Source of the DNA: Podarcis muralis
Lineage: Eukaryota
Direction: 5' to 3'
Assembly (NCBI RefSeq): GCF_964188315.1
Contig: NC_135660.1
Span: 61,504,001 to 61,568,000, forward strand
DNA: 64,000 bases
In this document: piece after piece, positions 5,405-60,498 of the stretch
Layout of the letters: every line of letters starts with the position of its first letter
Position numbering within the stretch: the stretch's first letter is position 1
The notes under the pieces: model-generated
What the model was told of the DNA's origin: nothing
The model's database searches: none
What the model saw: the letters and a program-made list of their open reading frames with translations, nothing else
Made by a program: the position numbers and the translations under genes

Positions 5405-5476
5405 GAATTTATCAGGGAACATTTTTTCAAGTCTCATGAATGGACTCTTCTCTGAGCTTTTAGCTCTGAAAGCCTT
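5405..5476 (+). CDS. ADGRA-family exon: last leucine-rich repeat ([24 protein letters not shown])
   Basis: Pyrimidine tract ...tttttccttttag acceptor, 72-bp phase 2-2 exon typical of LRR exons, donor gtaagt; too short for the ORF track. Confidence 0.92.
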
Positions 5477-8400
5477 GTAAGTATGCCTTGATTAGGTAAA
5501 GGCCCATTTTGGCACCATTTACACATATTACTGTGATTAGCTTCATCATTATATAGATTTTCAGCATTGTATGTTCAGTGAAATTAATATAAATTCCTTA
5601 TGTGCATTTTGTAAAAAGCATTCTAATCCTTTTCTGTCACATGGAATATTTTCAGATCACTGGAATATTAAACAGTTGTGTTGGAGCCAGAATAGTAGGG
5701 TTGTAATAATTGTTTCATTGTGATTTTTAATTTGAAGTTGTTTTTTTAAAAAATGCTGAAGCTTTATGGTTGATTTCCCTTAACATTTTATGAAGGGGTG
5801 GATGGAAGCAGAGAACAAGTAAATTAATTCCTTACAGTGTTTACATAAAACATCTTATATGTTCATTATAACCCTACTTAGATTAAACCTACTTATTAGA
5901 GTTAACACATTTAAACATTCCTCTTTTCTAGCAGATGGGGGGATTTTATTAAACAATAAAAATAATGATGAAAAATTAACGAGTGTAGAGGTTAAATAGT
6001 GCTTCTATAATTACTTGCATAGACTCATAGAATTGTAGAGTTAGAAGGGATTCCAACATCATCTAGTCCAACCCCCTTCAATGGAGGAATCTCAACTAGA
6101 TCATACATCAGTGTTTCCCAACCTTGTGCCTCCAGCTGTTTTTGGCCTACAATTCCCATCATCCCTTGCCACTGGTCTTGCTAGTCAGGGATGATGGGAG
6201 TTGTAGGCCAAAAACATCTGGAGGCACAAGGTTGGGAAACACTGTCATACATGACAGATGGCCATCCAACCTCTGCTTAAAGACTTCCATGTGGCAGTTA
6301 AATAGTACAGAGCCTATATACTGTTATTGATTTCGCTAAATTAGAAATAGAATTTGACATCGTCTGTTGGAATTATGGAACTGAAAGACTATAATGCAGA
6401 CCCATCAAAGTCAAATGCTTTGGAAGGCATAATGCAGATATCCATCTATGGCTTTCGTTAGGCAGAGTAAGGCAGATGCCTCAGGCAGCTGATAGAGTGG
6501 GTATAAGGTAGTAAAGGTGTTGTAGCAAGGTGTTGTGACTACCATGATTCCTGCTTAGCTAGCATGCTGCCCTCAGTGGAGAATGCTTTGTTCCATCACT
6601 ACTGTTGAAGCAAGGCTCATCCTCCATCTGGTTGGTTTCAGGACATGGAATTGTGGGGTGGGGAGGATGCCATCTTGCAATTTGCCTCAGGCATCAAAAC
6701 ATCATAGGCTGGGCCTCTTTGTTTGTATGCCACTTTTCCACAAAATTGTGCCCAGAGTGGTTCTGAGCATGTCAAATGGGCAACAGTAGAACTAAAAAAA
6801 AAATCCATACCAGGCACTTTTTGCAGATAATCATGGTGTCAAAAAGATAGATATGTCATTAGAGAAAAATCAGTCCATTTAATATTACTGAAAACAATAC
6901 AAATGAACTAACCTAACAGCTTAAAACTAAACAGGAGAGAGAGAATAAAACCTAACAGAGCCTTACACCGAGTCCAACCAAATGTTAGTCTAGCTCAGTA
7001 TTATCTACACCAGGACTACAATTCCCATCATCCCTGACCACTGGTCCTGTTAGCTAGGGATGATGGGAGTTGTAGGCCCAAAACAGCTGAAGGGCCGAGT
7101 TTGGGGATGCCTGATCTACACTGACTTGGCAGCACTTCTCAAGGGTTTCTGACAAGGAGTCTGCCAACCCTACCTGGAGATGCCAGGGATTGAACTTGGG
7201 ACCTTCTGCATGCATAGCAGATGCTCTGTCTACAAAGATTCTCTACTGAGCTATGGCCCTCCCCACGGTATATATACAAGCCTGGGAAAATAAATATCAC
7301 CATTACAGAAAGGGCATTCCATGGAGGTTCGCTCCAATCACATCCATTGGATTGCAGCCACACCTCTCACATGTGGTAGCCTGCCAACTCTTACCTGGGT
7401 GATTTCCTGAGCAGCAGATGCACAGTGACTACACTCAATGTGTTTTCTCTCTCTCTGTCACCTGAAATGCCAAATTAAAATTCCCAGGTTGAGAGCCAAA
7501 ATTAATTCTACCTCAATAATTCTGAAAAACTGGATTCCCCACTTCTCCAGTTAAAATGTTTAAATCCTAAGTCACATACAGTAGATAACCTGGCTATGTG
7601 CTTTCACGTAGTGAGAGTTATTATTATTATTATTTTAATTCTATACTCTTAAATAACTCACGTCCCAAATACCTCATATAGCACTGTAAGCTTAAGAGCA
7701 AATGTTCAATTGGACAGTAAGACAAGAGCTTTCATTGTTCCCAAACATCCATAAGTGGAAGGAGGATGTCATTTAAATTCATCAAGCTACTGGACCTGTG
7801 AGGTAAACTCCTCCTTGCCATGTATACATATCCCATTACTAAAGGGAAAGGTGGAATGGTGCATCCATGCGGAGCACAAAGCTCAACTAAAACACCCATA
7901 TCATTATCCTGCTGTCCAAGAAGACAAACAAAACATCTGATTAAAGAGCTGCATTGTTTACGTAGTGTCGTGGTGACATAATCAGACTCATGGGCAAATA
8001 GCAGTGCTGTTTACATAGGCTTGCAGAGGCATAGAGCTATACGGGAGAAGATACTGAATGGTTTAGGGCATTAATGGTAAGCAGAAATGTCCTAAGTGGG
8101 ACCATGCTTAGCTGGGGGGAAATGCATGTTCTGTGCCTACAGAGAAACAGTTTTGTGAGATTGGGGGCTTCCATTGTTGAAGGAGCAAGGCAGGTTTCTT
8201 GGTGAGTTAATTGGCTCTAAGTACATGCCATTGGGACGCGGGTGGCACTGTGGGTTAAACCACAGAGCCTAGGACTTGCTGATCAGAAGGTTGGCAGTTC
8301 GAATCCCTGTGACGGGGTGAGCTCCCGTTTCTCGGTCCCAGCTCCTGCCAACCTAGTAGTTCGAAAGCATGTCAAAGTGCAAGTAGATAAATAGGTACCA

Positions 8401-11400
8401 CTCCGGTGGGAAGGTAAACAGCATTTCTGTGTGCTGCTCTGGTTTGCCAGAAGTGGCTTACTCTTGCTGGCCATATGACCCAGAAGCTGTATGCCAGCTC
8501 CCTCGGCCAATAAAGCGAGATGAGCGCCGCAACCCCAGAGTCGGCCACGACTGGACCTAATGGTCATGGGTCCCTTTACCTTTACCTTTACATGTCATTA
8601 GTATAAGAAAGGAAGCCGCTCTGTGCCAGAAGGCAAATGGATGGTAGTGAGAAGGACATCTGGATGGTAGTGAGAAGGACAATAGCCAGAGTAGAGCTGT
8701 GTGTGGGAGCTGAACTGGAAGGAGGCTGAAGACAGAAGCCTGAGAATGAGAGCCATGCTTAATTTCTGCTTGAATCCAAGTCTGTGGTCAGTGCTCTTTT
8801 TCTGGGGGCACTCAAAGGTACATAGTACTGGCACCCTTTTTCCTAGAAGAAAAGCACTGGCTATGGAAAAAGCAAGAGCTTCTGGATGCTAATGCTGTGA
8901 GCCCCTCCATTGCAGGCTCAGGTTGTTTTTCCCAATTGTTGGTGTTTAGACTACCTTTTTAAAGATTTGCCTTGAGAGAGTCTTTAAACCTCTTTTGTAT
9001 ATATGTGTGAATAAATCATAGATCATAAATGCAACATAGTCTCTGCTGTGTCTCATTCCAAGAAGACCAAACCCTGGGGAGGTGTGTCTGGAACCCCTGG
9101 ACTCTTACACTGCTTGGAGACTGGGGTGGCATGCAACAACATGTTCAGCCTCATGGAGGAGAGATGAATGGATGTGGATGATTATGTGCAGATAGAGGAT
9201 GCACAACTGGTCCTTGCTGCTGATGTGCCATTAGTGCTGGATGCCACTCAGATTATCTGTCTAGCTTCCTCTAAGAGCTAGTTAACTAAGATTTGTTAAA
9301 TGTCGTCAGTGTTTCAATGATTAGTTTTCTGTGACAATCACTGTATAAAAATCATGTTGAAAGGGATAGTATTGATTGGTTTTGGGTTTCATTTCAGACA
9401 TTTCTACACTGATTCTCTCACCTGTGACTGTAATCTCAAATGGGTTTTACACTGGGCTAGAAATGCTTCAGTTCGGATCTCAGAAGAAACAGTTTGTGCT
9501 TTCCCCAGGAGTTTACAAGGAACATCATTTCAGAACCTGAAAGAAAATCAGCTGATGTGCGGTGAGTGGTACTCTTCTTTCAGCGTCATGAATTGAAACC
9601 AGTATTCTCAGAGAAAGTGTATTCTGAAGGATAAATGCCAAGTGATTGGTGTGCAGAACTGGATGATAGCTGAAAGAAAGCAAATATGTCAGAAACCATA
9701 CTGAGGCTTAAGGTTAAACAATATGCAACTTAAAAAAAACAAAAACAAAATTAGATTGCAGATCTCTTTTGTATATAAATAAATGTTCCTTGTAAAACTA
9801 CCAGTGCCCTTATCTGCCTTTGTAACTCTTATACATTTGAATGTATCATAGGAAAGGTATTTCTCATTGCATTTCATCTTCAAATAAATAATCTTTTTTC
9901 ATTAGATTGTAGTGTGACAACAGGGAATAAATGTCAATCTATCTGCCACTCACCTTCACAAGCCTTGCAATATAAGCTGTACCTGTGTAGGGAAGGATGA
10001 ATTTTAATAATGGGGAGCTTTAAGAGAGGCAAAGATCTTAAAACAAATATTTGAAATAATAGAAACGGAATGGATGGGAAGGAGATAAAATAACATGTGT
10101 AAAGTCCTGTCTCTCATATTAGAGCAATCTCGAAACCACAGTGTGTATGTCGCTTTCTGAAGATCTCATCATGCAAACAAAACTGACCCTGAAAAAACTT
10201 AGAAGTTATTCTCTAGGTTTTGTATAGGAAGAAATGTTATTTCGCTATGTGCCACATGGTTATCTGACTTCAAATCATTTGTATGTGCAGCTTACATGCA
10301 TGCATTTATAAAATGTACTCCAGAATACTTTGTCCAGAATACTCTGAATAGTTTTATACCATCCTTATCTTTCAAATTTCTCTGTCAGAGGACTGTTGAT
10401 CTTTCCCCTCAGCCAATTCCCTGTGGTTACAGCAGTTCATCTGTATAACAAGTCAGATATGTAAATATCAGAGTCTGAAACACCTTGGCATTGCAGCTTG
10501 TTACCAGAACCAATACTTTGTTGTGCAAAATAACTTATTAAAAACAAGTTTTTCTTATGAATTAAATATAAAATTGATGCCACCCAGTGAAGTTCATTTG
10601 ACATGAAGTCTGGATTTGTACCTGTTTATCTTCATTAAAACATGAACAGAAGGTTTTGGCAAGGTCTGCCTGAAGCATAACTGATCCCAGGCAATTTTCC
10701 CTATGTGCTGTAAGCAAGCTTTGCTAATTGAGCCTCGCTGAGCAGCCAGCAGCCATTCTCATTTCTACAAATCTGAAGTAAGAAATTTTACTTTCTTCTT
10801 GGCTTTATGGCTGTTCCATTAATTTTCACACTTGGTATCCAAGGACAAAGCCAAAGGGTTACTTAATTTTTAGTCAATCTTTTATATTATTTATATTGAT
10901 TACATTGACATGCTGACTATAAAACTTCAGGCTCCATCGCAGGTTGCCGACAGAGCTGCTGCAATGATGGTCCTGAGGAGACTATTGCCTTTTCTTCAAA
11001 TTAATTACCTTCACCATTTTACTTTATAATTAACCAAACTTAAACTCAGCTAGAAAATGTTGAGGAACAGACAGATCAGTCCTACGCTCGAATTATGCTG
11101 GGATTTGCAATAGTCTGCTATGTTGGTGGAACAACTGCCTTATCCAATGGTGGGTCAGCCCAGGAAGGAAGGTGAGAAAACACCTTAAAGGGCGATTAGA
11201 CAAATTAAAGAAGGATAACACTATCAACAGCTGCTTGCCATGATGTCTATGATCTTTCTTCAGTACTGGAGATTGCATGTCTCAGAATGCCAGTTGCAGG
11301 AGAATACCAGTGGAGAACATGTGCTTGTGCACTTCCCATAGACATCTGGCTTTCACCGTTAGAACAGAATGTTGGACTAGATGGACCTTTGCCATAGTCC

Positions 11401-14671: not shown

Positions 14672-14723
<52 letters not shown>

Positions 14724-29700: not shown

Positions 29701-32700
29701 TTACTCATCTAGTTCGCAGATCCCTGCCATACGGAGATTTATAGACATTGCTGACCACCTGGCAACTATCTTTGTGAGCCCTCTTCTTGACATGGGGCAC
29801 ACAGTAATTGCATCTGTGGAGGATATACCCTGTGTCTTTAAAAAACAAACTTGGTATTTTCATTCTAGTGACAAGAAACGATGGGCATGATCCTGTACCC
29901 ATTTAGCTGGAAGTAAACCCCATTAAATTCAAAGGGACTTGCTGCTGAGTAGACATGTGTAGAATAGCACTGCGAAGATGTACTTGTCCATTATTGTTTT
30001 TGCTGACTCTAGTTCTGCTCCTCTCCTCTCCTCATCACTAACAATGCAATAAACGAATTGTTTCCTTTATACTCTCACCTACAGCTGGACCGCTGGAGCT
30101 GCCTCTATTTGAATTGATACCATCCCAGAGACAAGTGGTTTTTCATGGCGACCGCTTACCATTTCAGTGTACAGCAACATACCTCGATAATACTACACAA
30201 GTGCATTGGTACCACGATGGACGCCTAGTTGAAACAGATGACGAAAGTGGCGTGTTTGTGGAGGACAGCATAACGCATGACTGCTGTTTAATCACACGGT
30301 AATATATTCCCATCTTTGGTATTATTTAGAACAGCTTTTCCCAACCTGGTACACTTCAATTATATATAGGGCTACAATTTCCATCAGCCCCAGTCAGCAT
30401 GGCCCAATGGTCAGGGATGATAGGTGTTAGGATTCAACAACTTCTGGAAGGAACTGGGTCAGGGGGAACATACAGTATGATTTTAGCAGTGTGGTGAATG
30501 ATGGTGACTAGTTTGGGTTTTTCTTTTGGTCTTTGCTGGCTGCCAGGTAGATTTCCATCTTTCTGAGATGCTCACACTTCTCCAGATTCAAACTGGAGTC
30601 TAAATACTAATGTTAGAGTCTCCCCCCCCCCCCCCCAATTTCACTTGGTTAAGCTGTAATCCAGTGGCACCTGCATGGTACATTTGACTTATTCGGGAGA
30701 GGTATTTGAAAGATGACATAAAGTTATTTTAATACTCCCAAGTGCTTTAGGAGACATATGATGAGTAAAGAGAGTAACTTCTTCTTAGAATGATCCCTGA
30801 AATACTCGTTTCTTTTGCTGATGAATTCCAGCTCTGCAGCCTCGTCCATCAAATGTCTACCGAAACTTTCCATTTAAATTCAACAATGCTAAAGGGCAGA
30901 CATTTCCCTGGAACATGCATTGGTTTTTGATAGCCCTTTGGAGGTGTCTAAACTAGAATTATAGGTGATTCTGTTGATAAAAAGTTTCTCATTGGTTATG
31001 TATTATATTCATGATAGTACTTACTTCTGAGCAGATATGTATAGGATTGCGGTGTTGACATATTTTCCCCTCGTGGAAAATGGCTAGCTGCTACAAACTA
31101 CCTCGCAATGGATGCTCCCTCTCCCACCACTTTCTGTTAATGATCAGGTGGAGTAATATTTAAAGGCTGTCTATGAATTCTCCAGTCTCTCTCTCTCTTT
31201 CACTCTGTAACACAGAGGGGGAAAGTGTTCACACTGATTAACATCAGTTTCTTTCTATGTCGACCATTTATTCATTAGTATCATTTTACTAGAACAAGCT
31301 TTTTCTTCTTAAAAACGCAACTTATTTATTTATTTTCAAACACTCTTGCTGAGAATCTGTGCCCCCGTGAGATTTTTTTCAGAAGTGTCCTGCTGTTGCA
31401 CCTGCCAGCAATACCTAGACAGAACAATTCTCAAAGCCGCATGCATTTGGCAGCAACCAATGCAAATGTATTAAGAACCTGAATCATGCTTTATGAATTT
31501 TATATCGGACTGTACAATCTCAGAACTACGATGCCCTGCCAGGTTGCTCTAATTTGTGTGTGTTTACTTTATATCGAGGAACAACTGACATCATCTAGTT
31601 CATTTTTTATACCAGTAGGAGACTGGAATGATGAGCTATACTGCTGCTTTTCAACCTTTGCTATGCAAAAAAAATGTTTTACAGTATACAAAATTGCCTT
31701 GTGGCGAATGTTTAGAAAGATCAAAAAAGAGGCAGCATGTTGAATATGGGAAGGTTGAAACTGATTCACAACATAAAAATCAATATGTGCAACGTGGGGC
31801 TGATGGTTTAATTAGTTCTATCAAACACCTGCTGCTTAAATTACTGGGTAGATACTGCCCTGCCCTCTCATTTCTGCAACTGCAGACTTTCTTTGCAACC
31901 CACCATAAAACTAAATGTCTGATTAATATGATCTAATCTGCCTTGATTTTATAACACTTCTCCTCCCACTTTCTATACCCATGAAGTTAACAGAATGTAG
32001 CCCATATATTGTAATATCCTGACCTAGCATTACTTTTGAACATTATACTAATTGTATTTTTGAAAGCCAACACACTTTGCATAGTTAACACTTTTGAATA
32101 TTTGCGACCCTTGCAAAAATAATATCTATCATATGGGGTCAGGGATAGGGAGCTAGTAAAATCGGTGGGACAGCATTTTGTAGCTGTTTGCAAGGTTCCC
32201 AGAAGAACTGTAGAAAGCTTTAGAAAGGGCTGTTGAAAATGGAGGGCCATTTTGGCTCAGCCTCAAGTATAGCTCCACATATAAAATCAAATTAATGTGT
32301 GTGCAACTGTTACTGTAAGTGTTGTCATAGAAACAGGGGCAGTCTTCCACCCCCTGTGTTTAACTGTATGTGTTGCCTTTTAGTGCAGATACTATACTTT
32401 AGTGCAGATACTAGTCTTTCCAAAGCTACTTTCTGAAATTTGTAAAGAGAATGACTAAAAGTGTCCATATATCCTGATTGTTCTGGATATGTATTTCCAG
32501 CTCAACACAATTATCGTTTATAGACATTCCAGTTTTATTGTCTTTCCTTTGTAAATATAAGATATTGAGCCACATTACTAGCTTTCTGTTAAGACATAAT
32601 TGAAAATAAATGACAACCTAAACATTTTTTTTGTACTGTGCTAATGAAACTAATTTATAAAGTGAGACTCTGCCTCATGACATTTTTCTTGGCAACAAAT

Positions 32701-38260: not shown

Positions 38261-38306
<46 letters not shown>

Positions 38307-50300: not shown

Positions 50301-53300
50301 GGGCAGAAATGGCATTGAGTAGGGTATAGGTAAAAGGGGAGACCCCCTTAAGGGACCTTGCGGGGTGAACAGCCCCCCACCCTAGCTCAAATGGGGCAGG
50401 GCTAGTCAGAAACCAACTTAAGTTATCAGCAGCCCCAGTCTCATGGTTTTGCGCCACGTTGGATCATTGGTGTGTGGCTGCCCCCCCCCCAACTTTTGTG
50501 ATTAAGGTTGTACTTCAGGTCAGATCCTGTTCTGATGCCATGCCAGCCTCAACTATTTCTGTTAGTGAATAAATTTGTGGCCAGTTTCATCCATACACAT
50601 CTCCTGGTTCGGAGGGTGGCAACAAGAAAACAGGCCTTTTCTGTGGTGGCTCCCCAATTGTGGAATGCTTTCCCCAGAGAGGCTCGCCTGGTGCCATCAT
50701 TACATGTCTTTAGACGCCAGGCAAAGACATTCCTCTTTAGTCAGGCCTGTGGCTATTAAATAATCTATGGCCTGTGAAAGTGTGGGGGATAGGACTGTTG
50801 TTATTATGATTATTTTACCATTAGGCTGTCTGTCAGTATGCTCTCTACTATTCTTTTGTTACGTTTTATCATTGATGTCTTTTAATGTGTTTCTAATTTC
50901 GTACACCACCCCAAGATCTTTTGATAATGAGTGGTATATAAATTGAAAGAATAATAATGAGAATTTTCCTTGCACTCTCACCTGGCTTTGAAGGGGGCTG
51001 CTACAGTAAATGCCCTACAATGGTGTAGTCTCCTTGCCCTCCCATTCTTGTTCTGAAGACTATACAAATTCTGGAAACTCCAAAAGAATGCAGTTTTTAT
51101 TAGGTCTGTAGCCCCATTCTCACTGAGATGATAAACCCATGTCTTGGCTAAATCCCTTCAGGTGGAAACCTCATATGATAGAATGCCTCTCCATACAGAA
51201 ATACTGCCGGTGCATTGAAAATGATGTGTCAGGGAGCACAGACCTAGCTTAGCCTTCTATCTGACATGGTAGTTTTCTGTATATAGGATTTGTGTTTGTG
51301 AGGCAGCATTCCATCAATGTAAACACATTTTCATATTACCGGATCTTTAATAGAATATGCTATTTGATATATGGAAGGAAGTGTGGAAATGTACGGTTTA
51401 ATAAAGAAAAGCTATCACTCATTTTTTAGAAGGAAAGGCCATCGGTAGTTTTCCCCTTTATCATTCCCTAGCGTAATAGCATATCAAACCAAAACAGCTT
51501 CAAATAATAAACAGCACTGCTGTTAACTTGCAACTCCACTGATTATGAGTTTTCTTCTCATAATCAATGAGTAAAATTGAGGCCCACAGACGAACCAAGT
51601 GTTGCTGATTAATACTTATTGTTACCAGGCCTAGAAATTTCTAGGTGCTGTTCAGAAATTAAAAGACAGCACAAGGCCTGCCAGTAGGCTTACTTAATTA
51701 ATAAACATGACACAGAAAGGATGGAAAGGGAAGCATCTAGGTGGAGTGTTTTAATTGATTAATGTTCCAATTAAACTGATTAAAGCACGTAGCAGTTCAA
51801 GATTATCTGTGCCAAACTGTTTGTGTATATTCTACCAATTTTCTCACTTGAGTGTTAGTGATGTGTGAATTTCCCACCTAGATTGTCACATTACAATTTA
51901 GTACTGATTATTTATTTATTTATTTAAAAGTTTTGTATACTGTCCTTTGCCATTTGGCCTCAGAGCAGCTGCAGCAATAAAATATATAAAAACAGAATAC
52001 AGAGCAAATATAATAAACATAATTTTATAACTTCAACAAACAGAAGAAAAGAAGAAATCACTCAAACCTCGTTACAGGATAGACTGGCATTCTGGAAAAT
52101 GCAATGCAATTTTTTTAATGAATGATGGTGGCAGATAACCCTGTCCCTCCAGTCTGGCTTAGTAGGCACAGAGAATCAGTTTAAGGCTTCCAATTCAAGA
52201 TGAATATTTCACGTGCACTGCAGTCTAGGTGCACTTAGAAGTAAGGCCTTCTGAGTAAGCCCTATTGGAGCTTATTTCCTAGCAAGTGTGCACAGTAGGG
52301 GTGGTGAACATGGTGTCTTCACTATGTTGGACAACTCCTTTTAGCGTGGCTAATTGTGAGGGATGATGGGAATTGTAGTTCAACAACTTCTAGAGGGAGG
52401 TATGTTCGCTACTCCTGGTGCACAGAATTGCATCCTTAGCTGACTGTTGATTATTGTTATTTTGCTTGTAGATGGCCCAAAACTCTGGCTGGTGTAATTG
52501 CTTACCACCCATGTCTTCAGTATTCTGTCAATCCAGCTTCCCTCTTGAATGCAGCAGAAGAGTCAAAAGCATGGCGTAAGTGTAATCGCACAGGTCGGTG
52601 GGCTGAAGAAAGCTATTCTGAATGTCCTTACTCACAAGAAGCTACTCAAGTCCTTCATGCTTTTAGTCAGGTAAAATGACACCAATTGTTATGCATAGAG
52701 CATACTGTAGATGTTGCACATCTCTTATCAGCACACTGCACAGAAATAGAAGTTTACTTCTTTGTTATCTAAGGTATATTTCAAGGACAGGATCGGACAT
52801 ATGCTTGTAGTATCCAAGTTCTACAAATATTCTAGGTTTGAACAAGGAAAGTCAGAAGTGTTTATTATATAGATCAGGAGAGGGGAAAGACCACTCCTTT
52901 CCTTCATGAGAGCCTCCATTCAAGCTGCCCAATCATGGGTGGTTGGGGGGAAATGTCTGCGGGACCCTACTCTCTCCACTGCTTCCAGTTGGATCCACTC
53001 CCTGAGCATAAATAGGAGATGCGATCAGCCCCTGGCAGCTCAGTCAGGGCCAATTTTCCCACCCTCCCATGCTAAACTATATATAATGAGTTGCACAATG
53101 GCAGGTTGCCGGGGCGTGCTCATGGCTTTGCTATGGAAGAACTCAGTTGCCATATTTGGGGCCAGGCAAGACTTTTCTCTCAATCCAGTTGACCCTGGCT
53201 GAGGGCTTTGCTGACCTCATAGCAATCGTCACAACTTGATGGCGGGTAAGACATTGGGTTGGATCCTTAGCCAGAGGTGGATCACACTCTACCACAACAA

Positions 53301-56300
53301 GCAACAGGATAGCCCATTAAAGCGGTCAGTGAGGATGGTGCTTCTGTTCAGATACCCTGATGGGAGCCAAAGGGCCATAGCACAACCGCCCAGGATGGTG
53401 CTGCTGAAGGGATCGCCCCAATTTGATGTATGTCATAGGGCAACCCCAATAATCAGCTAGCAGACGGGTTGGTTGATTCCAGATACATACCCAATGCCTA
53501 CACCAAACCTACTTGCATCTGTAATCAATAAAGTTGTGGTTGGATTTTATCCCAACATGGCTGTCCTGTGTTTCATTGCTTTCTTTGAATTCCTGGCCCT
53601 GGCAGAGGGCTTAGTGCACCTGGGCCTGCAAAATTTGGCCTTCCAGATGATGTTGAGTTATGACTCCCCTCACCCCTGGGCATTGGTTGTGTTTACTAGG
53701 ACTGATGGAAGTTGTTCACCAGCATCTGGTGGGCCAAAGTTTCCCCACTCCTGTTCTAGATTCAGGCAAGATGCTCATGATATCTGACCTTAATACATCT
53801 GTTCAGTTAGCAAACTAGTGAAGCAGTGGCACCAAGGTGTAAAAGTTACCTGATGACTTAACTGCGCACAGCCTTGTTTGTAGCAAGTATTTTACCCTGT
53901 AAAGGGCTGATGATTGAGACTGAATTTTTGCATGAATGACATTTTTCATCTGTAAGACTGAATTTGTTTATTTTTAAAAGTGCAACTGGGGTTAAACATT
54001 TGGCTGTGTTTTATAGGCAGCATTTTTTTTTTTTGTATTCTATTTCCAGATGCATCTTAACTCCACCAATGCACTTGAATTTTCCCATCAGCTTGCAACC
54101 TACACAAGAGATGCTGCCAACTTTTCAGATAAGGAGGACATTATCTATTTGGCTTACATGCTGGAAAAGCTAATCATATATATGGATGAAATAAAAGATG
54201 TAAGATACTGTCTTACTAATGAATATGTGACTGTTGGAAGCTGAAAAACAAAGAACAGAGGCATGATCTTAAATTTAGTACCAAATACCCAGCAGTAAAT
54301 TTCTGTATTTTAATATACAAAAGTTGTGGCTTTTCAACCAGATACTTCAAATATGCACATTCTTAATTTCATTTGAATTAGAATTTTTTCCCAGTACAAC
54401 AATAATTATGGTATATAGGGTTGTATCCAGAGCTATACAAACACAATTCCACTTGTTTAAATGGGCTTCTTCTCCTTCCATACCCCCAAAATTTACTCCA
54501 GAGGATTCTTCATTCTTCTGCAGCTGATTTTCAGGATACATAGAGGGCTGCAGGACAGATTATGGTTAGGGTAGTTACTACTGGTGGGGAAAGGCTGCCT
54601 CTTTCAGACCTTGTGCTTGCCTCCCAGATGCTATGTCTAGTTACAGCTGGAAACAAGATGCTGGACCTAATACCCCATTGGCTGGATCTAGTGTGTGTGC
54701 GTAGGGGGTCCTTTTGTTCTGTTTTATACACAGCTTCTTCACTAAGGTTGAAATGAAGGCAGTTCTTGTAATATCACAAGAGTTCTAATCCTATTTAGTA
54801 TTATTGCCGTGAACAATATTTTGGCTGCAAGCTGGTATGATGTGCTTCATATATTTTGATACTTCTAGACATCTGCTTTCTCCAACATTCATGGTGCCTT
54901 CATAGGTAATTGACACAGTGACCCAAAGTGGGCATGCATTCCCCATAGCTTATGAAGGGGGGAAAAGAGGACCAGTACCAAACCCAAAGAGGAAAAAAGA
55001 GGCAAGGCCTCAACATGGTATTAAAAAATAGTAAAGGTAAAGGGACCCCTGACCATTAGGTCCAGTCGTGACCGACTCTGGGGTTTCGACGCTCATCTCG
55101 CTTTATTGGCTGAGGGAGCTTCTGGGTCATGTGGCCAGCATGACTAAGCCACTTCTGGCGAACCAGAGCAGCGCACGGAAACGCCGTTTACCTTCCCACC
55201 AGAGTGGTACCTATTGATCTACTTGCACTTTGACGTGCTTTCGAACTGCTAGGTTGGCAGGAGCAGGGACCGAGCAATGGGAGCTCACCCCATTGCGGGG
55301 ATTCGAACCACCAACCTTCTGATTGGCAAGTCCTAGGCTCTGTGGTTTAACCCACAGCGCCAAAAAAAATAGAACCTTACAAAGTAGTGAATGCTTAACA
55401 CATCTTGGTGAAAACCTTTCGGGGGCACTAAAAGAACGATGACAATCTACATCAGGCGTGGCTGATCTTTGACTCTCCAAATATTGCTGAACTACAGTGC
55501 CCTGCATTCCAAACCATTGGCCATGCTTATTAAGGCTGATGGTAGTTTTAGTTCAGCAACATCTGGAGAACCCTAGGTTTCCCATTCCTGATACACATAG
55601 TCACTACATTTCGTAGCACAACCCATATCTCAAGTTGTGTTTGACCTCACAACTGAATTGGGACACTAGCAATTTATTTACTACTACAAAGACTCTCCTC
55701 CCTGGAAGAGAGGGGAGTGGTTGTGGGCGGGAGCCCGAGCACCGCCCCTAGCAGGGGGCGTTAGCCCCCTGCCTCCACCTCTCCTGGCTGGCGCCCACGC
55801 CCCTCGGCAGGCACCCAACCAGGTGCCTCCGAGGGGGCGTTCTCAGCAGCCATTTGCTGCAGCGCCAGCCTCTCCCCGGCCTCATTCTTCGCCGTCGTCT
55901 CGTCGCCCATTAACCTTATATCACGTGTCCTTGTGTATTCATTTCACATTGCGGGGGTCGGGTCCTCGAACCACAATTTATTTACAATTTAAAACAGAGA
56001 TCCTGCACAAGAACAGGAGCCCCCCCCCCCACTTCATCCCCATGGAGGGCAATGGGAAGAACAATTGGGAGAGGGATGTTAGTCACTTATCCTCACTATC
56101 CCTCTCTCACATTTACTTAACTTGGAAAAAGAACACATGGAGTGGGATTAGATTGCATCCGTAGTCAGGGCAGGGGCTGGAAGAGTAACAAATCACTGGT
56201 AAAGCACTCATAGCACGATATACTTTATGTCAATGGAACATTATTGCTTGGGCTCATATAATTCTGAAACAGTTTTGACTTTATAGTTACTGACTTGGGG

Positions 56301-59300
56301 ACAGGCTTATCCATAAGAAATCAATTTAGTCTTATAGCCAGAATACAGGATTTAGGTTGATGCTCTAAGAACTAGTAATTCCTGAAATGCTCACTAGACC
56401 AGTTAAATGCAGCTGCTTTCAATTGTGCTTTTATGTCATTGTTGTGCAGTAGTCAAATACTTTGCACTATTCCTTTTTTTCTCCCCCTTCCCTCCTACCA
56501 GCTTGCAGATGCTGTAGTTGAGATTGCCAGCAATATAATGCTGGTAAATGACCATGTATTATGGATGGCACAAAAGGAAGATAAAGCTTGTACCAGGATT
56601 GTACAGTGTGTGGAACATATTGCAAATCAAACTCTGACCAGTAATACACAGGTCATATCAAAGGTATTTCTTGAGATTTATTTGTGGCTTTTTGATATGG
56701 AAAAGGTGGGAGTAGGAGGGAGAAGCAGAGAGGGATGGGGGGGGGGGAGATCTGGGTATGCATACAGCATTGGTTTATATCTCAACTGATTTTGTAGCAC
56801 CCAGTGCATTTGTCTTATGAGCTCGTGTTCATCATCAGAACCTAGAAATGACTCAGTAATAATTATTAGTACTTACTCCCTTTTTTTTTTTTACCACCAC
56901 GGTGTGACCGATAATCTATATTAGATAAATGATTGGTCCATATTTTGGGGGCTGTCGCAACACACAGCTTTAAAACTTAGTAGTATCACTTAATCATATT
57001 CTGAGTTACGTAGAGAAAGAAGGAGTCTGACACCACCAACCAAGAGTAATTACTGTGGGATTAGTTATTTCTGCTGAGAGTAATATACAGTGGTACCTCT
57101 AGTTATGAACTTAATTCATACTGGAGGTCCGTTCTTAACCTGAAACTGTTCTTAACTAGAGACGTGCTTTCACTAATGGGGCCTCTTGCTGCTGCTGCAC
57201 CGCCAGCACACGATTTCCGTTCTCATCCTGGGGCAAAGTTCTCAACTCGAGGTAACTCTTCCAGGTTAGCGGAGTTTGTAACCTGAAGCGTTTGTAACTT
57301 GAGGCATTTGTAACTTGAGGTACCACTGTACTTTAAAGTAGAGGTAGAATAGGGCTAGACTTCAAGTTTGTCACATCTACTTTGATTTTTGATTATTATT
57401 TTTTTACTAAAACCCTAAGATCTACAATCGAGCCAGGTGCAAAAGGCATAACCATTTTTTAAAAACAAAACAAAACACAGGGTACCTCTGAGCATATTCT
57501 GAACCTAGAAATGTGTTTCCAGTGCCAGAACTTAACTGACCTCACAGTCCTTTCACACAAAAACTACTACTGACTACCTTTCTTCATTTAAATAGCCTAA
57601 TTTAAGTGAGAAGAGTAGTTTTGTTGCTGCTGCTGCTGCTGCTAAACAATTTAGAGTCACAAACCTTTGCAAGTCTACTGCAAATCACCCAGAAAACAAA
57701 CAGTAGGTTTGCTTTCTGCCCACTCCTGCCTTTAACCAGTTGTTTTAAACCAGTGGTTCCCAATTTGTAGTCTGCAGACTCCAGGGGTCTGTGATACATA
57801 CCCAGCAACTGTCCAGGACATCCCATTTTGCAGGGCACCCAAAAACATGCAAGTCATTAGACCCACACAGGAGTGGCTTGATTTTGTGCTGAGACATGAT
57901 GGAGGATATGGTGACACCATTCACATAACAAGAACTACCACAGAGATATCAACATTTTCAAAAGTAGGGAGTCCGTGGCTTGGCTTTTGGAAAACAGGGG
58001 GTCTGCAGTACTTAGCTATTTGGGAACCACTGATCTAAACTAATAGTTTGCCCTTTTTACTGTTTTTGAATTATTAGAACACACTTTCCCCTAATAAGAT
58101 GAATCAAATAATAAAGTGATAGTTCAGAATAAAAGCCTTCCAAACCTCAGTTTCTGTTAGAACAGAAAGCATTTCTTGGATTGCATTGCTTAGGAGAACC
58201 ATACTTAGGATTTCTAGCTAGTTGTATACGTCAGAATAGTAGTAAAGACATAACTGATGCCATATGGCCGTAGCAGAGGATCCCTAATCAGATTTAGTTT
58301 TGCATTTAGAAGTCAGTTCTTATCTCTGACTACCATGTTTCATGTTACAGCAGCAGATGTTCAGCGAGACTTGACGATAACATGCAAAAACAAATTCTGA
58401 TCTAGAAGACGTCCTTTGGATGCCAATATATGAAACAACAAATTGGAAACCTAGATAGTTTATCTATTGGAGTCTGCCTTTCACACATCAAAGGAAAGGA
58501 AAAACAGGAGTCCTTAGAGCACCTTTCCTGAATGAGCTTCCCATAGTTTGTGCTGTGCTTTTCACATAATAGGGAAGGGCATGTCAATCTCTGACTTTTG
58601 TCTTCTGGGTTTCTAAGGGTTTTCCTGTTGTTATTCTGTCTCTCGCAGCTACAGTAAACCTACCATTAAAATTATGGACTGGTCATTTCTTCGTCAGAGG
58701 GCAAACGGGCAAATTTAGCAGGGGATCAAATACTTTCCCCCCTCACTGTGCATACTGAACAAGAAGTAGCAAGGATACCTAAAATTAGTGGAATGTCTTC
58801 AAGTGGTCAGCAACTTCTTAAAAAGTCTACATTTTGTCATCCAATCTAGTTGAAACAAGAACCTTCTCCTTTAGCTCTGCTAGCTGATGCTTGTGATGTG
58901 GCTGGCCTGTGATCATTATTGTGGTCTTCTAAAATCACATGGTTCTGTTCTGTCACCTTCTCTTCCCAAGATATCTCTCTTATCCTTGATGATAGTTGGC
59001 TTTTGTACTGTGATATACTTCATTGATGCCGGGAGTACCTGGCTGTATCTCTGCTATTTGGAAGGCTCTCTATTATCTGGAAAATCTGCCCTACTGGGAA
59101 CTATTGGTACAGCTGATTCACCTTGCATTCCCCTTTCATATTTGCACTTGTTTTTGAAGTCAGTAAATGATTTTCTTTCCTGCTGCAATGTGTGTCCAGC
59201 CAGAACTAACGCACAAAAAGTGGAACAGAGGCACCTTAATGTTGCTTGATGTTGTATATGTAGTATGCATATATGACGAAGTTATCCAGAAGTTGATGTT

Positions 59301-60498
59301 GATATGATAGTAAATGTTTTTAGATGTCAAGTACCACAGGTCATTTTTCTTCTTCTTGTTTAAGGGTATCTATCTCCCTTTGTGGACAATTAGGCAGACT
59401 GCTTCTTTGTCTTGATCCTACTTAGCCATTCTTTATGTCCCCCCCCCCCTTCTGTAGGCAAATTAGCGTACAGTCAACTTCAACTTGTAAATAAAGCTGT
59501 AGACTTCTCTGTGTAGTCTCGTACAATACCAAACAACTGCTGTTCATTTTGGAGGCTAGCCAGCAGCAATTAAGCAAAATGCATCACTGAGACAGTGCTA
59601 GCCTCCGTTTCTCTCTGAATATGAAAAGACCATATCTTCTTGAAGATGTAAATGATTCCAGCTAATGAAACTGTAAATATTTTTTTGACCAGTCCTGTCA
59701 CTTCACCTCCTCTGTCACCGTTAATCGGTACTTTACATCATGGAACACTAAGAAATGTGTCTTGATTCAGGGAGACCATCCATTTGGCTGTAGATGCTCT
59801 AGAGAAACTTGAACTATTCCTTCCTTGACCACATTTAGTTGCCATAGTAATATGATATGAATTATTACTGCCATAGCACTGCGAGAAAAAAATTGCCAAT
59901 CTGAATTCCTGCACATTTCCCATTCATTTCCAAGGTGGTGAGCATCTGACCGTAGGAATCTTGTTAAAACAAACAACTAATGACTGTTAAAATACAATTA
60001 CTCCAGTTAATATCATTCTTCTCTGTAAAGATAAAATTTAAGAAATGTGTTAGGTCCTAGTACATTTAAAAAAGAAGAAGATCCTTGTACGTTTTTAAAA
60101 ATTAAAAATAGTGTTGCAAGCCTACAAGTTATGTAACTTTATGGGTGCACATGAATGGTGTTTTGTGATGCATTATGTATGTGTGTTTGTGTGTATAGTA
60201 CAGCATATGCAAATACGTAATGTAGATTTTATACAAGTTATTGCCTGTAAAAATATGTTAAAACTACACCAGCTCCTCCAATTTGTTTTGACAGGTTTCT
60301 CTTAATATTGCTCTGGAGGCCTTTATGATCAAGCCATCTAGCTTCATGGGGATGACTTGCACTGCCTTCCAGAAAATATCTGCAGATCCAGACAGGTCAC
60401 TGAGCCGCAACACAGGGAACAGGGAGACAGACCAACGTTTGAATTTTAAGTGCAATGCTGGCAGTCATAGTGCCTCTGTGGTTAATTTCTCTCCAATG
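5405..60498 (+). CDS. ADGRA1: Partial multi-exon gene (8 internal exons) for an ADGRA-family adhesion GPCR ectodomain (LRR-LRRCT-Ig-HRM-GAIN); probably long-form ADGRA1/GPR123
   Basis: Exons 5405-5476, 9398-9561, 30085-30298, 46946-47110, 52472-52670, 54050-54199, 56502-56663 and 60295-60498 splice in frame (phases 2,2,1,2,2,0,0,0,0) without stops. Motifs such as [45 protein letters not shown] and NIALEAF are diagnostic of ADGRA2/ADGRA3-like receptors. Family call is secure; the paralog symbol is inferred by exclusion and sets the confidence. Confidence 0.6.
6018..6289 (-). mobile_element. CR1-type 3' end fragment interrupted by a hAT MITE
   Basis: Reverse complement of ...gggttggactagatg...ctctacaattctatg CR1 tail on both sides of the MITE. 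Confidence 0.65.
6109..6244. mobile_element. hAT (Charlie-like) MITE
   Basis: TIRs cagtgtttcccaacc/gttgggaaacactg, internal palindrome, perfect 8-bp TSD tcatacat. Confidence 0.9.
6978..7262 (-). mobile_element. tRNA-derived squamate SINE interrupted by a hAT MITE
   Basis: Minus strand gggccatagctcagtagag... A box and aggtcccaagttcaatccc B-box-like head, tail ...gataatactgagctag. Confidence 0.7.
7011..7113. mobile_element. hAT MITE with left TIR partly deleted
   Basis: ggactacaattcccatcatccc...gggatgatgggagttgtag core, perfect 8-bp TSD atctacac (7003-7010, 7114-7121). Confidence 0.88.
8233..8588 (+). mobile_element. Sauria SINE, full length
   Basis: gggacgcgggtggc start, accttt tail, TSD tacatgccatt/tacatgtcatt. 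Confidence 0.93.
8600..9137 (+). mobile_element. Degenerate LTR-like remnant (3' part)
   Basis: gtgaataaatcata polyA-like site and ...ggggtggcatgcaaca end resemble lacertid LTR ends as recalled; 5' boundary and TSD not found. Confidence 0.35.
9398..9561 (+). CDS. ADGRA-family exon: LRR C-terminal cap ([15 protein letters not shown]...ENQLMC)
   Basis: tttcag acceptor, gtgagt donor, 164 bp, CDC..W..C.P..L..C LRRCT pattern; inside ORF 9354-9596. Confidence 0.95.
11280..11405 (+). mobile_element. CR1-type 3' end remnant
   Basis: ...agaacagaatgttggactagatggacc...; a similar remnant lies at about 54560-54690. Confidence 0.5.
13541..13819 (+). mobile_element. Sauria SINE, 5'-truncated, second subfamily
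   Basis: Shared core but a distinct 3' half (gtgtctgcggacagcgctggcccccgg...ggcccgtacgggcaggggtacc) and accttt tail. Confidence 0.88.
14110..14660 (-). mobile_element. L2-clade LINE 3' remnant, old
   Basis: Minus strand agggcctct...ctcccatattgtggcattccctc...ccttcctatttagaaaggcc resembles the L2 RAFS..APxLWNSLP terminal region; boundaries approximate. Confidence 0.45.
14676..14720. repeat. (GA)n microsatellite
   Basis: About 22 GA units. Confidence 0.95.
14978..15162. mobile_element. hAT MITE
   Basis: Degenerate TIRs cggagtagtcaacc/ttgacaacccctg; TSD aactaggt/agctaggt. Confidence 0.75.
16799..17177 (-). mobile_element. Solo LTR (379 bp)
   Basis: TG...CA ends with short inverted termini tgttggg/cctaaca, perfect 5-bp TSD catct, AATAAA on the minus strand. 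Confidence 0.85.
17711..18028 (-). mobile_element. Sauria SINE with 3' internal deletion and altered 5' head
   Basis: taaaaggtaaagggacccc...tgcgtccc reverse copy; lacks about 35 bp after gaccattagg. Confidence 0.9.
20040..20149 (+). mobile_element. L2-type extreme 3' end fragment
   Basis: ggaagccacccagagtggctggg...cagccagatgggcgaggtataaat(tat)n, the same tail as the copy at 38028-38306; another fragment at about 27990-28038. Confidence 0.6.
20150..20718 (-). mobile_element. BovB LINE 3' fragment
   Basis: Reverse match to 2517-3081; minus ORFs [25 protein letters not shown] and [12 protein letters not shown]. Confidence 0.93.
21758..21792. repeat. (GT)n-(AC)n compound microsatellite
   Basis: (GT)5 directly followed by about (AC)12. 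Confidence 0.9.
24005..24345 (+). mobile_element. Sauria SINE
   Basis: Near full length; perfect 10-bp TSD tatggttcag (23995-24004, 24346-24355). Confidence 0.93.
28121..28610. mobile_element. hAT (Charlie-like) non-autonomous element
   Basis: TIRs tagtgattttcaacc/gattgaaaacctctg; TSD agctagta/agctagag. Confidence 0.75.
30085..30298 (+). CDS. ADGRA-family exon: Ig-like domain, first part ([29 protein letters not shown]...HDCCLITR)
   Basis: cctacag acceptor, gtaata donor, 214 bp; matches the ADGRA Ig exon; overlaps ORF 30114-30302. Confidence 0.95.
34040..34494. mobile_element. GC-rich hAT-type MITE containing a 33-bp minisatellite
   Basis: Perfect 8-bp TSD cctagact (34032-34039, 34495-34502); degenerate cag...ctg termini. 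Confidence 0.75.
35169..35410 (+). mobile_element. Tc1/mariner (Tigger-like) MITE
   Basis: TIRs cagtggtacctc/gaggtgccactg flanked by TA on both sides. Confidence 0.9.
36198..36553 (+). mobile_element. Sauria SINE
   Basis: Full length; TSD taaacattaca; unusual repeated/palindromic sequence at the 5' junction. Confidence 0.93.
38028..38306 (+). mobile_element. L2-clade LINE 3' end with (TAT)n tail
   Basis: agggccttcttggtagtggcacccaccctgtggaacgcccttcc encodes an [16 protein letters not shown]2 ORF2 C-terminal motif; about 15 TAT units at the end. Confidence 0.8.
38599..38956 (+). mobile_element. Sauria SINE
   Basis: Full length; perfect 13-bp TSD cctgctagatcta. Confidence 0.95.
39781..40105 (+). 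mobile_element. Degenerate tRNA-derived SINE (same family as 6978-7262) interrupted by a hAT MITE
   Basis: tttgcatgccaaaggtccc... head and ...gacagtgctgagctaaatg...ctcagtataacatagcttcctgtgtt tail. Confidence 0.6.
39920..40053. mobile_element. hAT MITE
   Basis: cagggcttcccaaacttgggtctccagc...gctggagactcaagtttgagaaaccc; TSD not intact. Confidence 0.85.
41410..41749 (+). mobile_element. Sauria SINE
   Basis: Full length with small internal deletion; perfect 15-bp TSD tatgtgtataggtta (41394-41408, 41750-41764). Confidence 0.95.
42717..42860. repeat. Fold-back inverted repeat (65-bp arms, 14-bp spacer)
   Basis: 42717-42781 and 42796-42860 are reverse complements with 2 mismatches. Confidence 0.95.
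42863..43080 (+). mobile_element. Tc1/mariner MITE with rearranged left end
   Basis: acctcaggttac...gaggtaccactg+TA; same family as 35169-35410; its left TIR tip lies inverted at 42782-42795. Confidence 0.88.
43451..43750. mobile_element. GC-rich hAT MITE (300 bp)
   Basis: TIRs cagagccgactt/aagacggccctg; perfect 8-bp TSD gtcactat. Confidence 0.88.
44884..45296. mobile_element. hAT-type non-autonomous element
   Basis: TIRs caaggctggattta/taaatccggcactg; perfect 8-bp TSD tgtggaag. Confidence 0.85.
45536..45952 (-). mobile_element. LTR-like sequence, probable solo LTR
   Basis: Minus strand begins tgttattggg and contains aataaagaagatattc...gtgaatccggtgctcacaac; no matching TSD found, left boundary uncertain. 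Confidence 0.45.
46527..46742. mobile_element. Palindromic MITE-like element
   Basis: 28-bp inverted repeats at 46550-46577 and 46684-46711; cagta.../...tactg outer ends. Confidence 0.55.
46946..47110 (+). CDS. ADGRA-family exon: Ig C-terminal strands and start of HRM ([19 protein letters not shown]...[15 protein letters not shown])
   Basis: ttgtag acceptor, gtatgg donor, 165 bp; Ig WEC motif; overlaps ORF 46956-47144. Confidence 0.95.
49845..49980. mobile_element. hAT MITE
   Basis: tagggtttcccaaacttgg/ccaagtttgggaatccctg; TSD gtttagcg/gtttagag. Confidence 0.88.
50091..50261. mobile_element. hAT MITE with internal 22-bp G-rich tandem repeat
   Basis: Perfect 16-bp TIR cagtggcgtagcgtgg/ccacgctacgccactg; perfect 8-bp TSD cactgtct. 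Confidence 0.92.
50600..50958 (+). mobile_element. L2-clade LINE 3' end
   Basis: ORF 50508-50759 contains [36 protein letters not shown], an L2 ORF2 C-terminal motif. Confidence 0.75.
52296..52417. mobile_element. Diverged hAT MITE
   Basis: taggggtggtgaacat/atgttcgctactcctg; perfect 8-bp TSD gtgcacag. Confidence 0.8.
52472..52670 (+). CDS. ADGRA-family exon: hormone receptor motif ([14 protein letters not shown]...[10 protein letters not shown]...ECPY...HAFSQ)
   Basis: ttgtag acceptor, gtaaaa donor, 199 bp, translated by hand; W-P-x-T, C, W-R-x-C, W, C pattern of the HRM domain. Not in the ORF track. Confidence 0.93.
53380..53640 (+). mobile_element. Possible DIRS/LTR terminal-repeat remnant
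   Basis: ...ccaaacctac...caataaagttgtgg...tgtcctgtgtttcatt resembles squamate retroelement termini as recalled; not bounded by a TSD. Confidence 0.3.
54050..54199 (+). CDS. ADGRA-family exon: GAIN subdomain A ([15 protein letters not shown]...[12 protein letters not shown]...DEIKD)
   Basis: T-rich tract then ttccag acceptor, gtaaga donor, 150 bp phase 0-0; ORF 54050-54244. Confidence 0.93.
55032..55363 (-). mobile_element. Sauria SINE
   Basis: Reverse copy with slightly truncated head; TSD aaaaaatag. Confidence 0.92.
55453..55590. mobile_element. Diverged hAT MITE
   Basis: gctgaactac...agttcagc palindromic core; TSD atctacat/atacacat. Confidence 0.65.
55718..56015. mobile_element. CpG-rich 298-bp insertion, possibly an LTR-type solo element
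   Basis: TG...CA ends flanked by ggag/ggag; much higher CpG content than its surroundings. Confidence 0.4.
56502..56663 (+). CDS. ADGRA-family exon: GAIN ([41 protein letters not shown]...VISK)
   Basis: Long pyrimidine tract then ccag acceptor, gtattt donor, 162 bp; inside ORF 56433-56789. Confidence 0.95.
57088..57328 (-). mobile_element. Tc1/mariner MITE
   Basis: TA-cagtggtacctc...gaggtaccactg-TA; opposite orientation to the other two copies. Confidence 0.9.
57751..58032. mobile_element. hAT (Charlie-like) MITE
   Basis: TIRs cagtggttcccaa/ttgggaaccactg; TSD ttttaaac/atctaaac. Confidence 0.82.
60295..60498 (+). CDS. ADGRA-family exon: GAIN ([27 protein letters not shown]...QRLNFKCN...NFSPM)
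   Basis: ttttgacag acceptor, gtaagt donor, 204 bp; overlaps ORF 60325-60561. Confidence 0.93.

What the first reader, a model, noticed from the sequence alone, without database searches (positions are those of the whole stretch)
5405..60498. ADGRA receptor that is neither ADGRA2 nor ADGRA3: likely ADGRA1 with an intact LRR-Ig-HRM-GAIN ectodomain
Seen: eight intact exons encoding a complete ADGRA-type ectodomain. Recalled knowledge: human ADGRA1/GPR123 starts just before TM1 and has no LRR, Ig, HRM or GAIN, while ADGRA2 and ADGRA3 have them. By eye these exons are only about half identical to either human paralog. They mix traits: LRRCT, HRM and first GAIN exon lengths (164, 199, 150) fit ADGRA2, while the 204-bp exon, LELP motif and KGD (ADGRA2 has RGD) fit ADGRA3. 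Inference: this is the ancestral adhesion-competent ADGRA1, with uncharacterised ligands and possible roles in Wnt/RECK-type signalling, and it would date ectodomain loss to the mammalian lineage.
Basis: partly seen in the sequence, partly recalled or inferred. Interest (0 to 1): 0.8.

Follow-up and report, generated by a model that had tools for sequence, protein, structure and literature searches.

The report
Lizard ADGRA1 gene keeps its ectodomain

Summary
Eight + strand exons (5405-60498), all with AG/GT borders, splice into 1330 bp with one open 443-codon frame. They encode the last LRR, LRRCT, Ig, HormR and the first half of a GAIN domain.

The protein is 84-91% identical to annotated ADGRA1 of six other squamates. 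It is about 80% identical to turtle and bird ADGRA1, 68% to platypus, 55-62% to marsupials, and about 50% to ADGRA2 or ADGRA3. An ectodomain tree puts it inside the squamate ADGRA1 clade (100/100). AU tests reject a place with ADGRA2 or ADGRA3.

In a 7TM tree the short, 7TM-only ADGRA1 of placentals nests among these long proteins. The long form is therefore true ADGRA1 and ancestral, present from sharks to marsupials. RNA contigs from three studies carry two of the predicted junctions.

Monotremes and marsupials keep the ectodomain, so the loss lies on the eutherian stem.

This is not new. RefSeq and UniProt already hold about 1300-residue ADGRA1 models for many non-eutherians. However, reviews up to 2026 still call ADGRA1 the only adhesion GPCR without a GAIN domain. 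The 7TM exons and the synteny lie outside the window and were not tested.

The parts
5405..5476 (+). Exon of 72 bp, phase 1: the last leucine-rich repeat ([23 protein letters not shown]).
   Evidence: AG/GT borders. 100% identical over 24 aa to bird and turtle ADGRA1 by tblastn.
9398..9561 (+). Exon of 164 bp: LRRCT cap with four conserved cysteines.
   Evidence: AG/GT borders. tblastn E 1e-21 to 1e-23. Cys33, 35, 57 and 78 are conserved in 50-52 of 52 relatives.
30085..30298 (+). Exon of 214 bp: linker with the LELP motif and the first half of the Ig (I-set) domain.
   Evidence: AG/GT borders. Pfam Ig_2/Ig_3/I-set. 83-90% identical to bird and turtle ADGRA1.
46946..47110 (+). Exon of 165 bp: second half of the Ig domain, then the start of HormR with the KGD motif.
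   Evidence: AG/GT borders. 95% identical to Anolis ADGRA1. KGD is conserved across ADGRA1 and ADGRA3.
52472..52670 (+). Exon of 199 bp: hormone-receptor (HormR/HRM) domain.
   Evidence: Pfam HRM E 5.9e-6, above the gathering score. The spliced joint 52670|54050 is present in RNA-run contigs of three studies.
54050..54199 (+). Exon of 150 bp: first helices of GAIN subdomain A.
   Evidence: AG/GT borders. Joints to exon 5 and exon 7 appear in RNA contigs. Helical in the model of the Pogona orthologue.
56502..56663 (+). Exon of 162 bp: GAIN subdomain A, continued.
   Evidence: AG/GT borders. Joint 54199|56502 in runs X1 and X5. Contigs continue past 56663 with letters that fit exon 8.
60295..60498 (+). 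Exon of 204 bp: end of GAIN subdomain A and first strands of subdomain B. The gene continues beyond the window.
   Evidence: AG/GT borders. tblastn E 1e-19 to 4e-30. No further exon was found up to 64000.

Best explanation
The window holds the middle of the squamate ADGRA1 (GPR123) gene. The eight exons encode residues equivalent to 149-591 of the roughly 1300-residue long form: last LRR, LRRCT, Ig, HormR and the first half of the GAIN domain.

Shown: the exons are intact, conserved and spliced in RNA, and they are orthologous to the ectodomain of proteins whose 7TM is ADGRA1.

Inferred: in this animal the exons are joined to GAIN-B/GPS, a 7TM and a tail ending in ETTV. That would make a canonical adhesion GPCR that binds extracellular partners through LRR-Ig and signals through the 7TM and PDZ/Dvl-type tail contacts.

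In squamate orthologues the GPS reads HF|G. It has no Ser, Thr or Cys nucleophile, so the receptor is probably not self-cleaved and would work as an uncleaved holoreceptor, as has been reported for ADGRA2.

The long form is ancestral to jawed vertebrates. Eutherians keep only a short form that begins at or next to the Met ending the tethered-agonist core (FAVLM|DLKTVLS).
For: - One open frame of 443 codons across eight AG/GT exons.
- Identity of 89.4% to Anolis, 87.8% to Pogona and Hemicordylus, 91.3% to Rhineura (over 381 aa), 84.4% to Heteronotia and 83.5% to Liasis ADGRA1, against about 50% to ADGRA2 and ADGRA3.
- Ectodomain tree: the window sits inside a squamate clade (100/100) within an ADGRA1 clade of 29 rows (100/99) whose branching follows the species tree. 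ADGRA2 and ADGRA3 form separate clades.
- AU tests reject the window with ADGRA2 (p 1.65e-5) or with ADGRA3 (p 1.57e-4).
- 7TM tree: eutherian short ADGRA1 nests within the long proteins (clade 100/99, 34 rows).
- Pfam on the orthologues finds LRR, I-set, HRM, GPS and 7tm_2.
- The AlphaFold model of Pogona 149-748 (pLDDT 79) matches solved HormR-GAIN modules: 6V55 E 6e-21, 4DLO TM 0.64, 8OEK, 4DLQ.
- RNA contigs of three studies carry joint 52670|54050 and two carry 54199|56502. One 2718-nt contig runs about 2.46 kb past exon 7.
- GPS and start-site alignment.
- The ETTV tail is conserved.
Against: - The 7TM exons, the first LRR exons and any neighbouring gene lie outside the window, so the link between ectodomain and 7TM in this genome is inferred from orthologues and from contig lengths. 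The contig sequences could not be read.
- No squamate ADGRA2 or ADGRA3 was in the tree. Turtle, bird, mammal, fish and shark sequences stood in for them.
- The runs that show the joints are labelled 'RNA?' and are assembler contigs. The one raw RNA-seq run gave depth below 1 on the exons.
- Function, ligand and lack of GPS cleavage are inferences from sequence.
Confidence: 0.93

Rival explanations
1. The exons belong to the squamate orthologue of ADGRA2 or ADGRA3, and their low identity to the human proteins only reflects distance.
For: The domain order is the same as in ADGRA2 and ADGRA3. RefSeq names many relatives 'ADGRA3-like' or 'ADGRA2-like'.
Against: ADGRA2 and ADGRA3 form their own well-supported clades that include bird, turtle and mammal members. 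The window is about 50% identical to those and 84-91% identical to squamate ADGRA1. AU tests reject both placements. The proteins with the misleading names carry a 7TM that groups with human ADGRA1.
Confidence: 0.01
2. In this species the ectodomain exons are a separate transcription unit. They would be an ectodomain-only, secreted or decaying gene, and are not joined to the ADGRA1 7TM. The long models elsewhere would be fusions made by gene predictors.
For: Public data hold many ectodomain-only fragments of 430-680 aa. They also hold 570-575 aa 7TM-only models in non-eutherians: Catharus, Pleurodeles, Protopterus and Dromiciops. The 7TM is not in the window.
Against: The GAIN domain is split between the window and the downstream exons, and GPS runs straight into TM1 in all long models. 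About 1300-aa models agree in length and domain order from sharks to marsupials. The frame is intact and 84-91% conserved among squamate lineages. One RNA contig continues about 2.46 kb past exon 7.
Confidence: 0.04
3. The window holds a lineage-specific second copy of ADGRA1, like zebrafish gpr123 and gpr123l, and not the single orthologue.
For: Teleosts have two copies (PMC4335454). Only one 64-kb window of this genome was seen.
Against: The end branch is short (0.039) and lies inside squamates. No second squamate sequence per species appears in the searches.
Confidence: 0.02

Closest known systems
ADGRA1 (GPR123), long form, as annotated in RefSeq/UniProt for Anolis carolinensis, Pogona vitticeps, Rhineura floridana, Hemicordylus capensis, Heteronotia binoei and Liasis olivaceus
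   Same: Identity is 84-91% over all 443 residues, with the same domain order, cysteines, KGD and LELP motifs. The window falls in the same clade.
   Different: It comes from another squamate species, and only the middle part of the gene lies in the window.
Eutherian ADGRA1/GPR123 (human, mouse; about 560-577 aa)
   Same: It is the orthologous gene by the 7TM tree of the full-length relatives. The tail ends in the same ..GPWKNETTV.
   Different: Eutherian proteins start at M-DLKTVLSLPQYPGEFLHP, directly after the position of the GPS and tethered-agonist core. They have no LRR, Ig, HormR or GAIN. The N-terminal part of the human 1279-aa isoform shows no similarity to the ectodomain.
ADGRA2 (GPR124), the Wnt7/RECK co-receptor
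   Same: It has the same LRR-LRRCT-Ig-HormR-GAIN-7TM-ETTV architecture. It is the sister clade of ADGRA1 in the ectodomain tree (98/97).
   Different: Identity is about 50%. ADGRA2 has RGD and LELH where this protein has KGD and LELP. It forms a separate clade. No test of RECK or Wnt7 binding was made.
ADGRA3 (GPR125)
   Same: It has the same architecture and shares the ancestral KGD and LELP states.
   Different: Identity is about 49-51%. It forms a separate clade. Its GPS is SL|S/G (PMC12059339), against HF|G in squamate ADGRA1.

Membership tests
ADGRA1 orthogroup | The ectodomain groups with ADGRA1 and not with ADGRA2 or ADGRA3. | tested here: met
   Tree support 100/99 and 100/100. AU p 1.65e-5 and 1.57e-4 against the alternatives.
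ADGRA1 orthogroup | The 7TM domain is orthologous to human and mouse ADGRA1. | not testable with these tools
   The 7TM exons lie outside the window. The feature is met for the squamate orthologues that share 84-91% of the ectodomain.
ADGRA1 orthogroup | Conserved synteny (INPP5A / NKX6-2 / CFAP46 / KNDC1 neighbourhood). | not testable with these tools
   The window has no other gene. The python orthologue spans about 398 kb with no neighbour within 10 kb. Earlier notes hold nothing on these genes.
ADGRA1 orthogroup | Cytoplasmic tail ending in the PDZ-binding motif ETTV. | not testable with these tools
   The tail is outside the window. It is present in all long and short ADGRA1 relatives checked.
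Adhesion GPCR (class B2) | GAIN domain fold next to the membrane. | tested here: met
   Window exons 6-8 encode GAIN-A and the start of GAIN-B. The model of the Pogona orthologue matches solved HormR-GAIN structures: 4DLO, 8OEK, 4DLQ and 6V55. Relatives carry precomputed Pfam GAIN_ADGRA3 and GPS hits.
Adhesion GPCR (class B2) | Canonical GPS cleavage triad H-L|T/S with a nucleophile at +1. | tested here: not met
   Squamate orthologues read THF|GNFAVLM. Birds have HF|N and a turtle has HF|S. The site lies outside the window, and cleavage itself was not assayed.
Adhesion GPCR (class B2) | Secretin-type 7TM domain. | not testable with these tools
   It lies outside the window. Orthologues carry 7tm_2.
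ADGRA2 | Groups with ADGRA2 and carries the RGD motif before HormR. | tested here: not met
   The window has KGD, not RGD. ADGRA2 is a separate clade, and the AU test rejects the grouping.
ADGRA3 | Groups with ADGRA3. | tested here: not met
   ADGRA3 is a separate clade (100/99), and the AU test rejects the grouping.

The most novel reading that the evidence does not exclude
The textbook statement that ADGRA1 is the only adhesion GPCR without a GAIN domain and adhesion modules describes a eutherian peculiarity. From chondrichthyans to monotremes and marsupials, ADGRA1 is a complete LRR-Ig-HormR-GAIN-7TM receptor. The eutherian protein is a natural truncation that starts at or beside the last residue of the tethered-agonist core, so it lacks both the ectodomain and most of the agonist. 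None of the papers searched here states this, although the sequences are in public annotation.
Probability: 0.45. Interest if true: 0.55.

Novelty: already known. Interest (0 to 1): 0.35.

Why it matters
For this genome the result is routine annotation: an orthologue of a gene already modelled in other squamates.

The wider point has some use. Papers and reviews from 2021 to 2026 treat ADGRA1 as an adhesion GPCR with no ectodomain, no GAIN domain and no tethered agonist, and they discuss its activation as a puzzle (PMC13178472, PMC12922695, PMC12059339). The data here show three things:
- The full ectodomain is ancestral.
- It has been under purifying selection for hundreds of millions of years: 84-91% identity across squamate lineages, with all structural cysteines kept.
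- It was dropped only on the eutherian stem, after faster change in the mammalian lineage (long platypus and marsupial branches).

Chicken, lizard, frog, fish or opossum ADGRA1 could therefore be used to look for ligands of the ectodomain. They could also be used to ask what the eutherian receptor gave up.

Tried and rejected
- PDB sequence search with the HormR exon found only CRF receptors and no ADGRA ectodomain.
- Pfam on single exons names only Ig and HRM. The LRR, LRRCT and GAIN exons are too short or too divergent to score alone.
- Earlier notes of this scan hold nothing on ADGRA, the 7TM part or the expected neighbours.
- Synteny through the python orthologue failed. The gene range is about 398 kb, no DNA was returned and no neighbour lies within 10 kb.
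- Rfam found nothing in the window.
- The last protein search did not return this species' own protein or any eutherian protein with an ectodomain among the 120 listed. That is not a test of absence.
- The spliced 443-aa protein was not handed to the big search tools. It has no reference and must not be typed, so single exons and stored orthologues were used instead.

Full report
OBSERVATION

The exons are:
- 5405-5476 (72 bp)
- 9398-9561 (164 bp)
- 30085-30298 (214 bp)
- 46946-47110 (165 bp)
- 52472-52670 (199 bp)
- 54050-54199 (150 bp)
- 56502-56663 (162 bp)
- 60295-60498 (204 bp)

Each is preceded by AG and followed by GT. Joined, they give 1330 bp and a single stop-free frame of 443 codons. 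Pfam recognises Ig in exon 3 and HRM in exon 5. tblastn with five related proteins finds exactly these eight exons and nothing else in the window. The gene therefore enters and leaves the window through long introns. One N gap lies at 61354-61687.

WHICH GENE

A search of 1.84 billion representative proteins with the Ig exon returned ADGRA-type proteins. Their source names showed ectodomain-only fragments labelled ADGRA2-like or hypothetical as the nearest ones. Two further searches brought in about 1300-residue proteins named ADGRA1. They come from squamates, turtles, birds, amphibians, gar, chimaera, platypus and marsupials, and they carry LRR, Ig, HRM, GAIN, GPS and 7tm_2 domains. The same searches also returned the roughly 572-residue, 7TM-only ADGRA1 of eutherians.

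Identity of the window protein to these relatives:

| Relative | Identity |
|---|---|
| Anolis ADGRA1 | 89.4% |
| Pogona ADGRA1 | 87.8% |
| Hemicordylus ADGRA1 | 87.8% |
| Rhineura ADGRA1 (over 381 aa) | 91.3% |
| Heteronotia ADGRA1 | 84.4% |
| Liasis ADGRA1 | 83.5% |
| Turtle and bird ADGRA1 | about 80% |
| Platypus ADGRA1 | 68% |
| Marsupial ADGRA1 | 55-62% |
| ADGRA2 or ADGRA3 of any vertebrate | 49-52% |

TREES

A maximum-likelihood tree of the ectodomain region (53 rows, 447 columns) gives three jawed-vertebrate clades: ADGRA3 (100/99), ADGRA2 (100/99) and ADGRA1 (100/99, 29 rows). The ADGRA1 clade follows the species tree. The window sits inside the squamates (100/100) on a short branch of 0.039. 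AU tests reject holding the window with ADGRA2 (p 1.65e-5) or with ADGRA3 (p 1.57e-4).

A second tree of the 7TM region (56 rows) places human, prosimian, tree-shrew, rodent, dog, horse, pig and whale ADGRA1 inside the same clade as the long proteins (100/99), next to marsupials and platypus. The long proteins are therefore true ADGRA1. Many of them are misnamed 'ADGRA3(-like)' or 'ADGRA2-like' by automatic annotation.

TRANSCRIPTION

Contigs of RNA-labelled runs from three studies of the same organism carry the joint 52670|54050 (GT..AG). Two of them also carry 54199|56502. One 1555-nt contig spans exons 5-6-7 and runs on at both ends. One 2718-nt contig begins in exon 6 and continues about 2.46 kb beyond exon 7, which is long enough to reach the end of the coding sequence. 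The contig sequences themselves are not shown, and the single raw RNA-seq run had depth below 1 on the exons. The evidence is therefore good for two junctions and only suggestive for the link to the 7TM.

STRUCTURE AND MECHANISM

An AlphaFold model of Pogona ADGRA1 residues 149-748 used a 45-sequence alignment and reached mean pLDDT 79. This stretch corresponds to the window's 443 residues plus the rest of GAIN. The model shows a beta-rich Ig domain, a HormR domain, a six-helix GAIN-A and a beta-sandwich GAIN-B. Foldseek matches solved HormR-GAIN modules of ADGRG6 (E 6e-21), BAI3 (target TM 0.64), BAI2, CELSR1 and latrophilins.

All structural cysteines of the window protein are conserved across the family.

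In squamate orthologues the GPS reads THF|GNFAVLM, without a nucleophile at +1. Self-cleavage is therefore unlikely. This is an inference and was not assayed.

Eutherian proteins begin M-DLKTVLSLPQYPGEFLHP. The long forms read ..FAVLM-DLKTVLS.. at this point. The eutherian protein therefore starts at or beside the last residue of the tethered-agonist core. This agrees with the report that the short N-terminus of mouse ADGRA1 is not needed for basal G-protein activation (PMC13178472).

The tail ..GPWKNETTV is shared by long and short forms.

KGD and LELP occur in ADGRA1, ADGRA3, lamprey and invertebrate relatives, while ADGRA2 changed to RGD/RGE and LELH.

EVOLUTION

The long form occurs in chimaera, sharks, rays, bichir, sturgeon, gar, teleosts, coelacanth, caecilians, frogs, turtles, crocodilians, birds, squamates, platypus and five marsupials. 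Every eutherian ADGRA1 returned is 569-692 aa with 7tm_2 only. The exception is the human 1279-aa isoform, whose extra N-terminal part has no similarity to the ectodomain. The loss therefore falls on the eutherian stem. Branches are long for platypus (0.26) and the marsupial stem (0.37) and short for sauropsids (0.007-0.1). This suggests weaker constraint in mammals before the loss.

WHAT IS KNOWN

[quoted passage not shown] The vertebrate repertoire studies used 7TM trees and do not mention the ectodomain (PMC8584163, PMC6900090, PMC4335454). No paper describing the long form was found in six searches. Absence from this library does not prove that none exists. The sequences themselves are public and named ADGRA1.

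VERDICT

For the window it is ordinary annotation of a known gene. The general point is correct, modestly interesting and little noted in the literature.

Noticed in passing
window 695-983, 8243-8585, 13541-13815, 17713-17994, 24011-24345, 36208-36550, 38609-38949, 41420-41748, 55031-55362: A SINE-like repeat of about 330 bp occurs in nine places (10 BLAST pieces) on both strands, 78-89% alike across the full-length copies. The copy at 55031-55362 draws very high depth and many variants from RNA contigs and reads, as expected of a genome-wide transcribed repeat.
   Followed up: partly
window 57028-57421, 35167-35416, 42864-43082: A second interspersed repeat occurs in three copies, 81-91% alike.
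   Followed up: partly
window 2062-2535 (+): A 157-aa ORF carries reverse-transcriptase motifs (..SYADDTTLMAES..). It looks like a LINE remnant in the upstream intron. It was not searched further.
   Followed up: no
window 34000-34530: A G+C-rich stretch has long overlapping ORFs in several frames on both strands and repetitive Trp/His/Pro-rich translations. Its nature is unknown.
   Followed up: no
window 61354-61687: An assembly gap of 334 N lies in the intron after exon 8. It was left as it is.
   Followed up: no
relatives: P0255, P0258, P0272, P0304, P0262 (GPS region, outside the window): Sauropsid ADGRA1 has Ser where fishes, frogs and mammals have the last GPS cysteine (..LHSTHF.. against ..IHCTHY..). 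Its cleavage site is non-canonical: HF|G, HF|N or HF|S.
   Followed up: partly
relatives: P0261, P0259, P0303, P0294, P0353, P0357 and many teleost entries: RefSeq names many ADGRA1 orthologues 'ADGRA3', 'ADGRA3-like' or 'ADGRA2-like'. Both trees put them in the ADGRA1 clade. The likely cause is that the human reference ADGRA1 lacks the ectodomain.
   Followed up: yes
relative P0331 (human ADGRA1 isoform 1, 1279 aa): The 728 residues before DLKTVLSLPRY show no similarity to the LRR-Ig-HRM-GAIN ectodomain and no Pfam domain. This part looks like an unrelated upstream open frame.
   Followed up: partly
relatives P0267, P0293, P0301, P0298: 7TM-only ADGRA1 models of 570-575 aa, starting M-D(L/F)KTV, also exist for a thrush, a newt, a lungfish and a marsupial. 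They may be a real short isoform from an internal promoter that predates eutherians, or truncated gene models.
   Followed up: no
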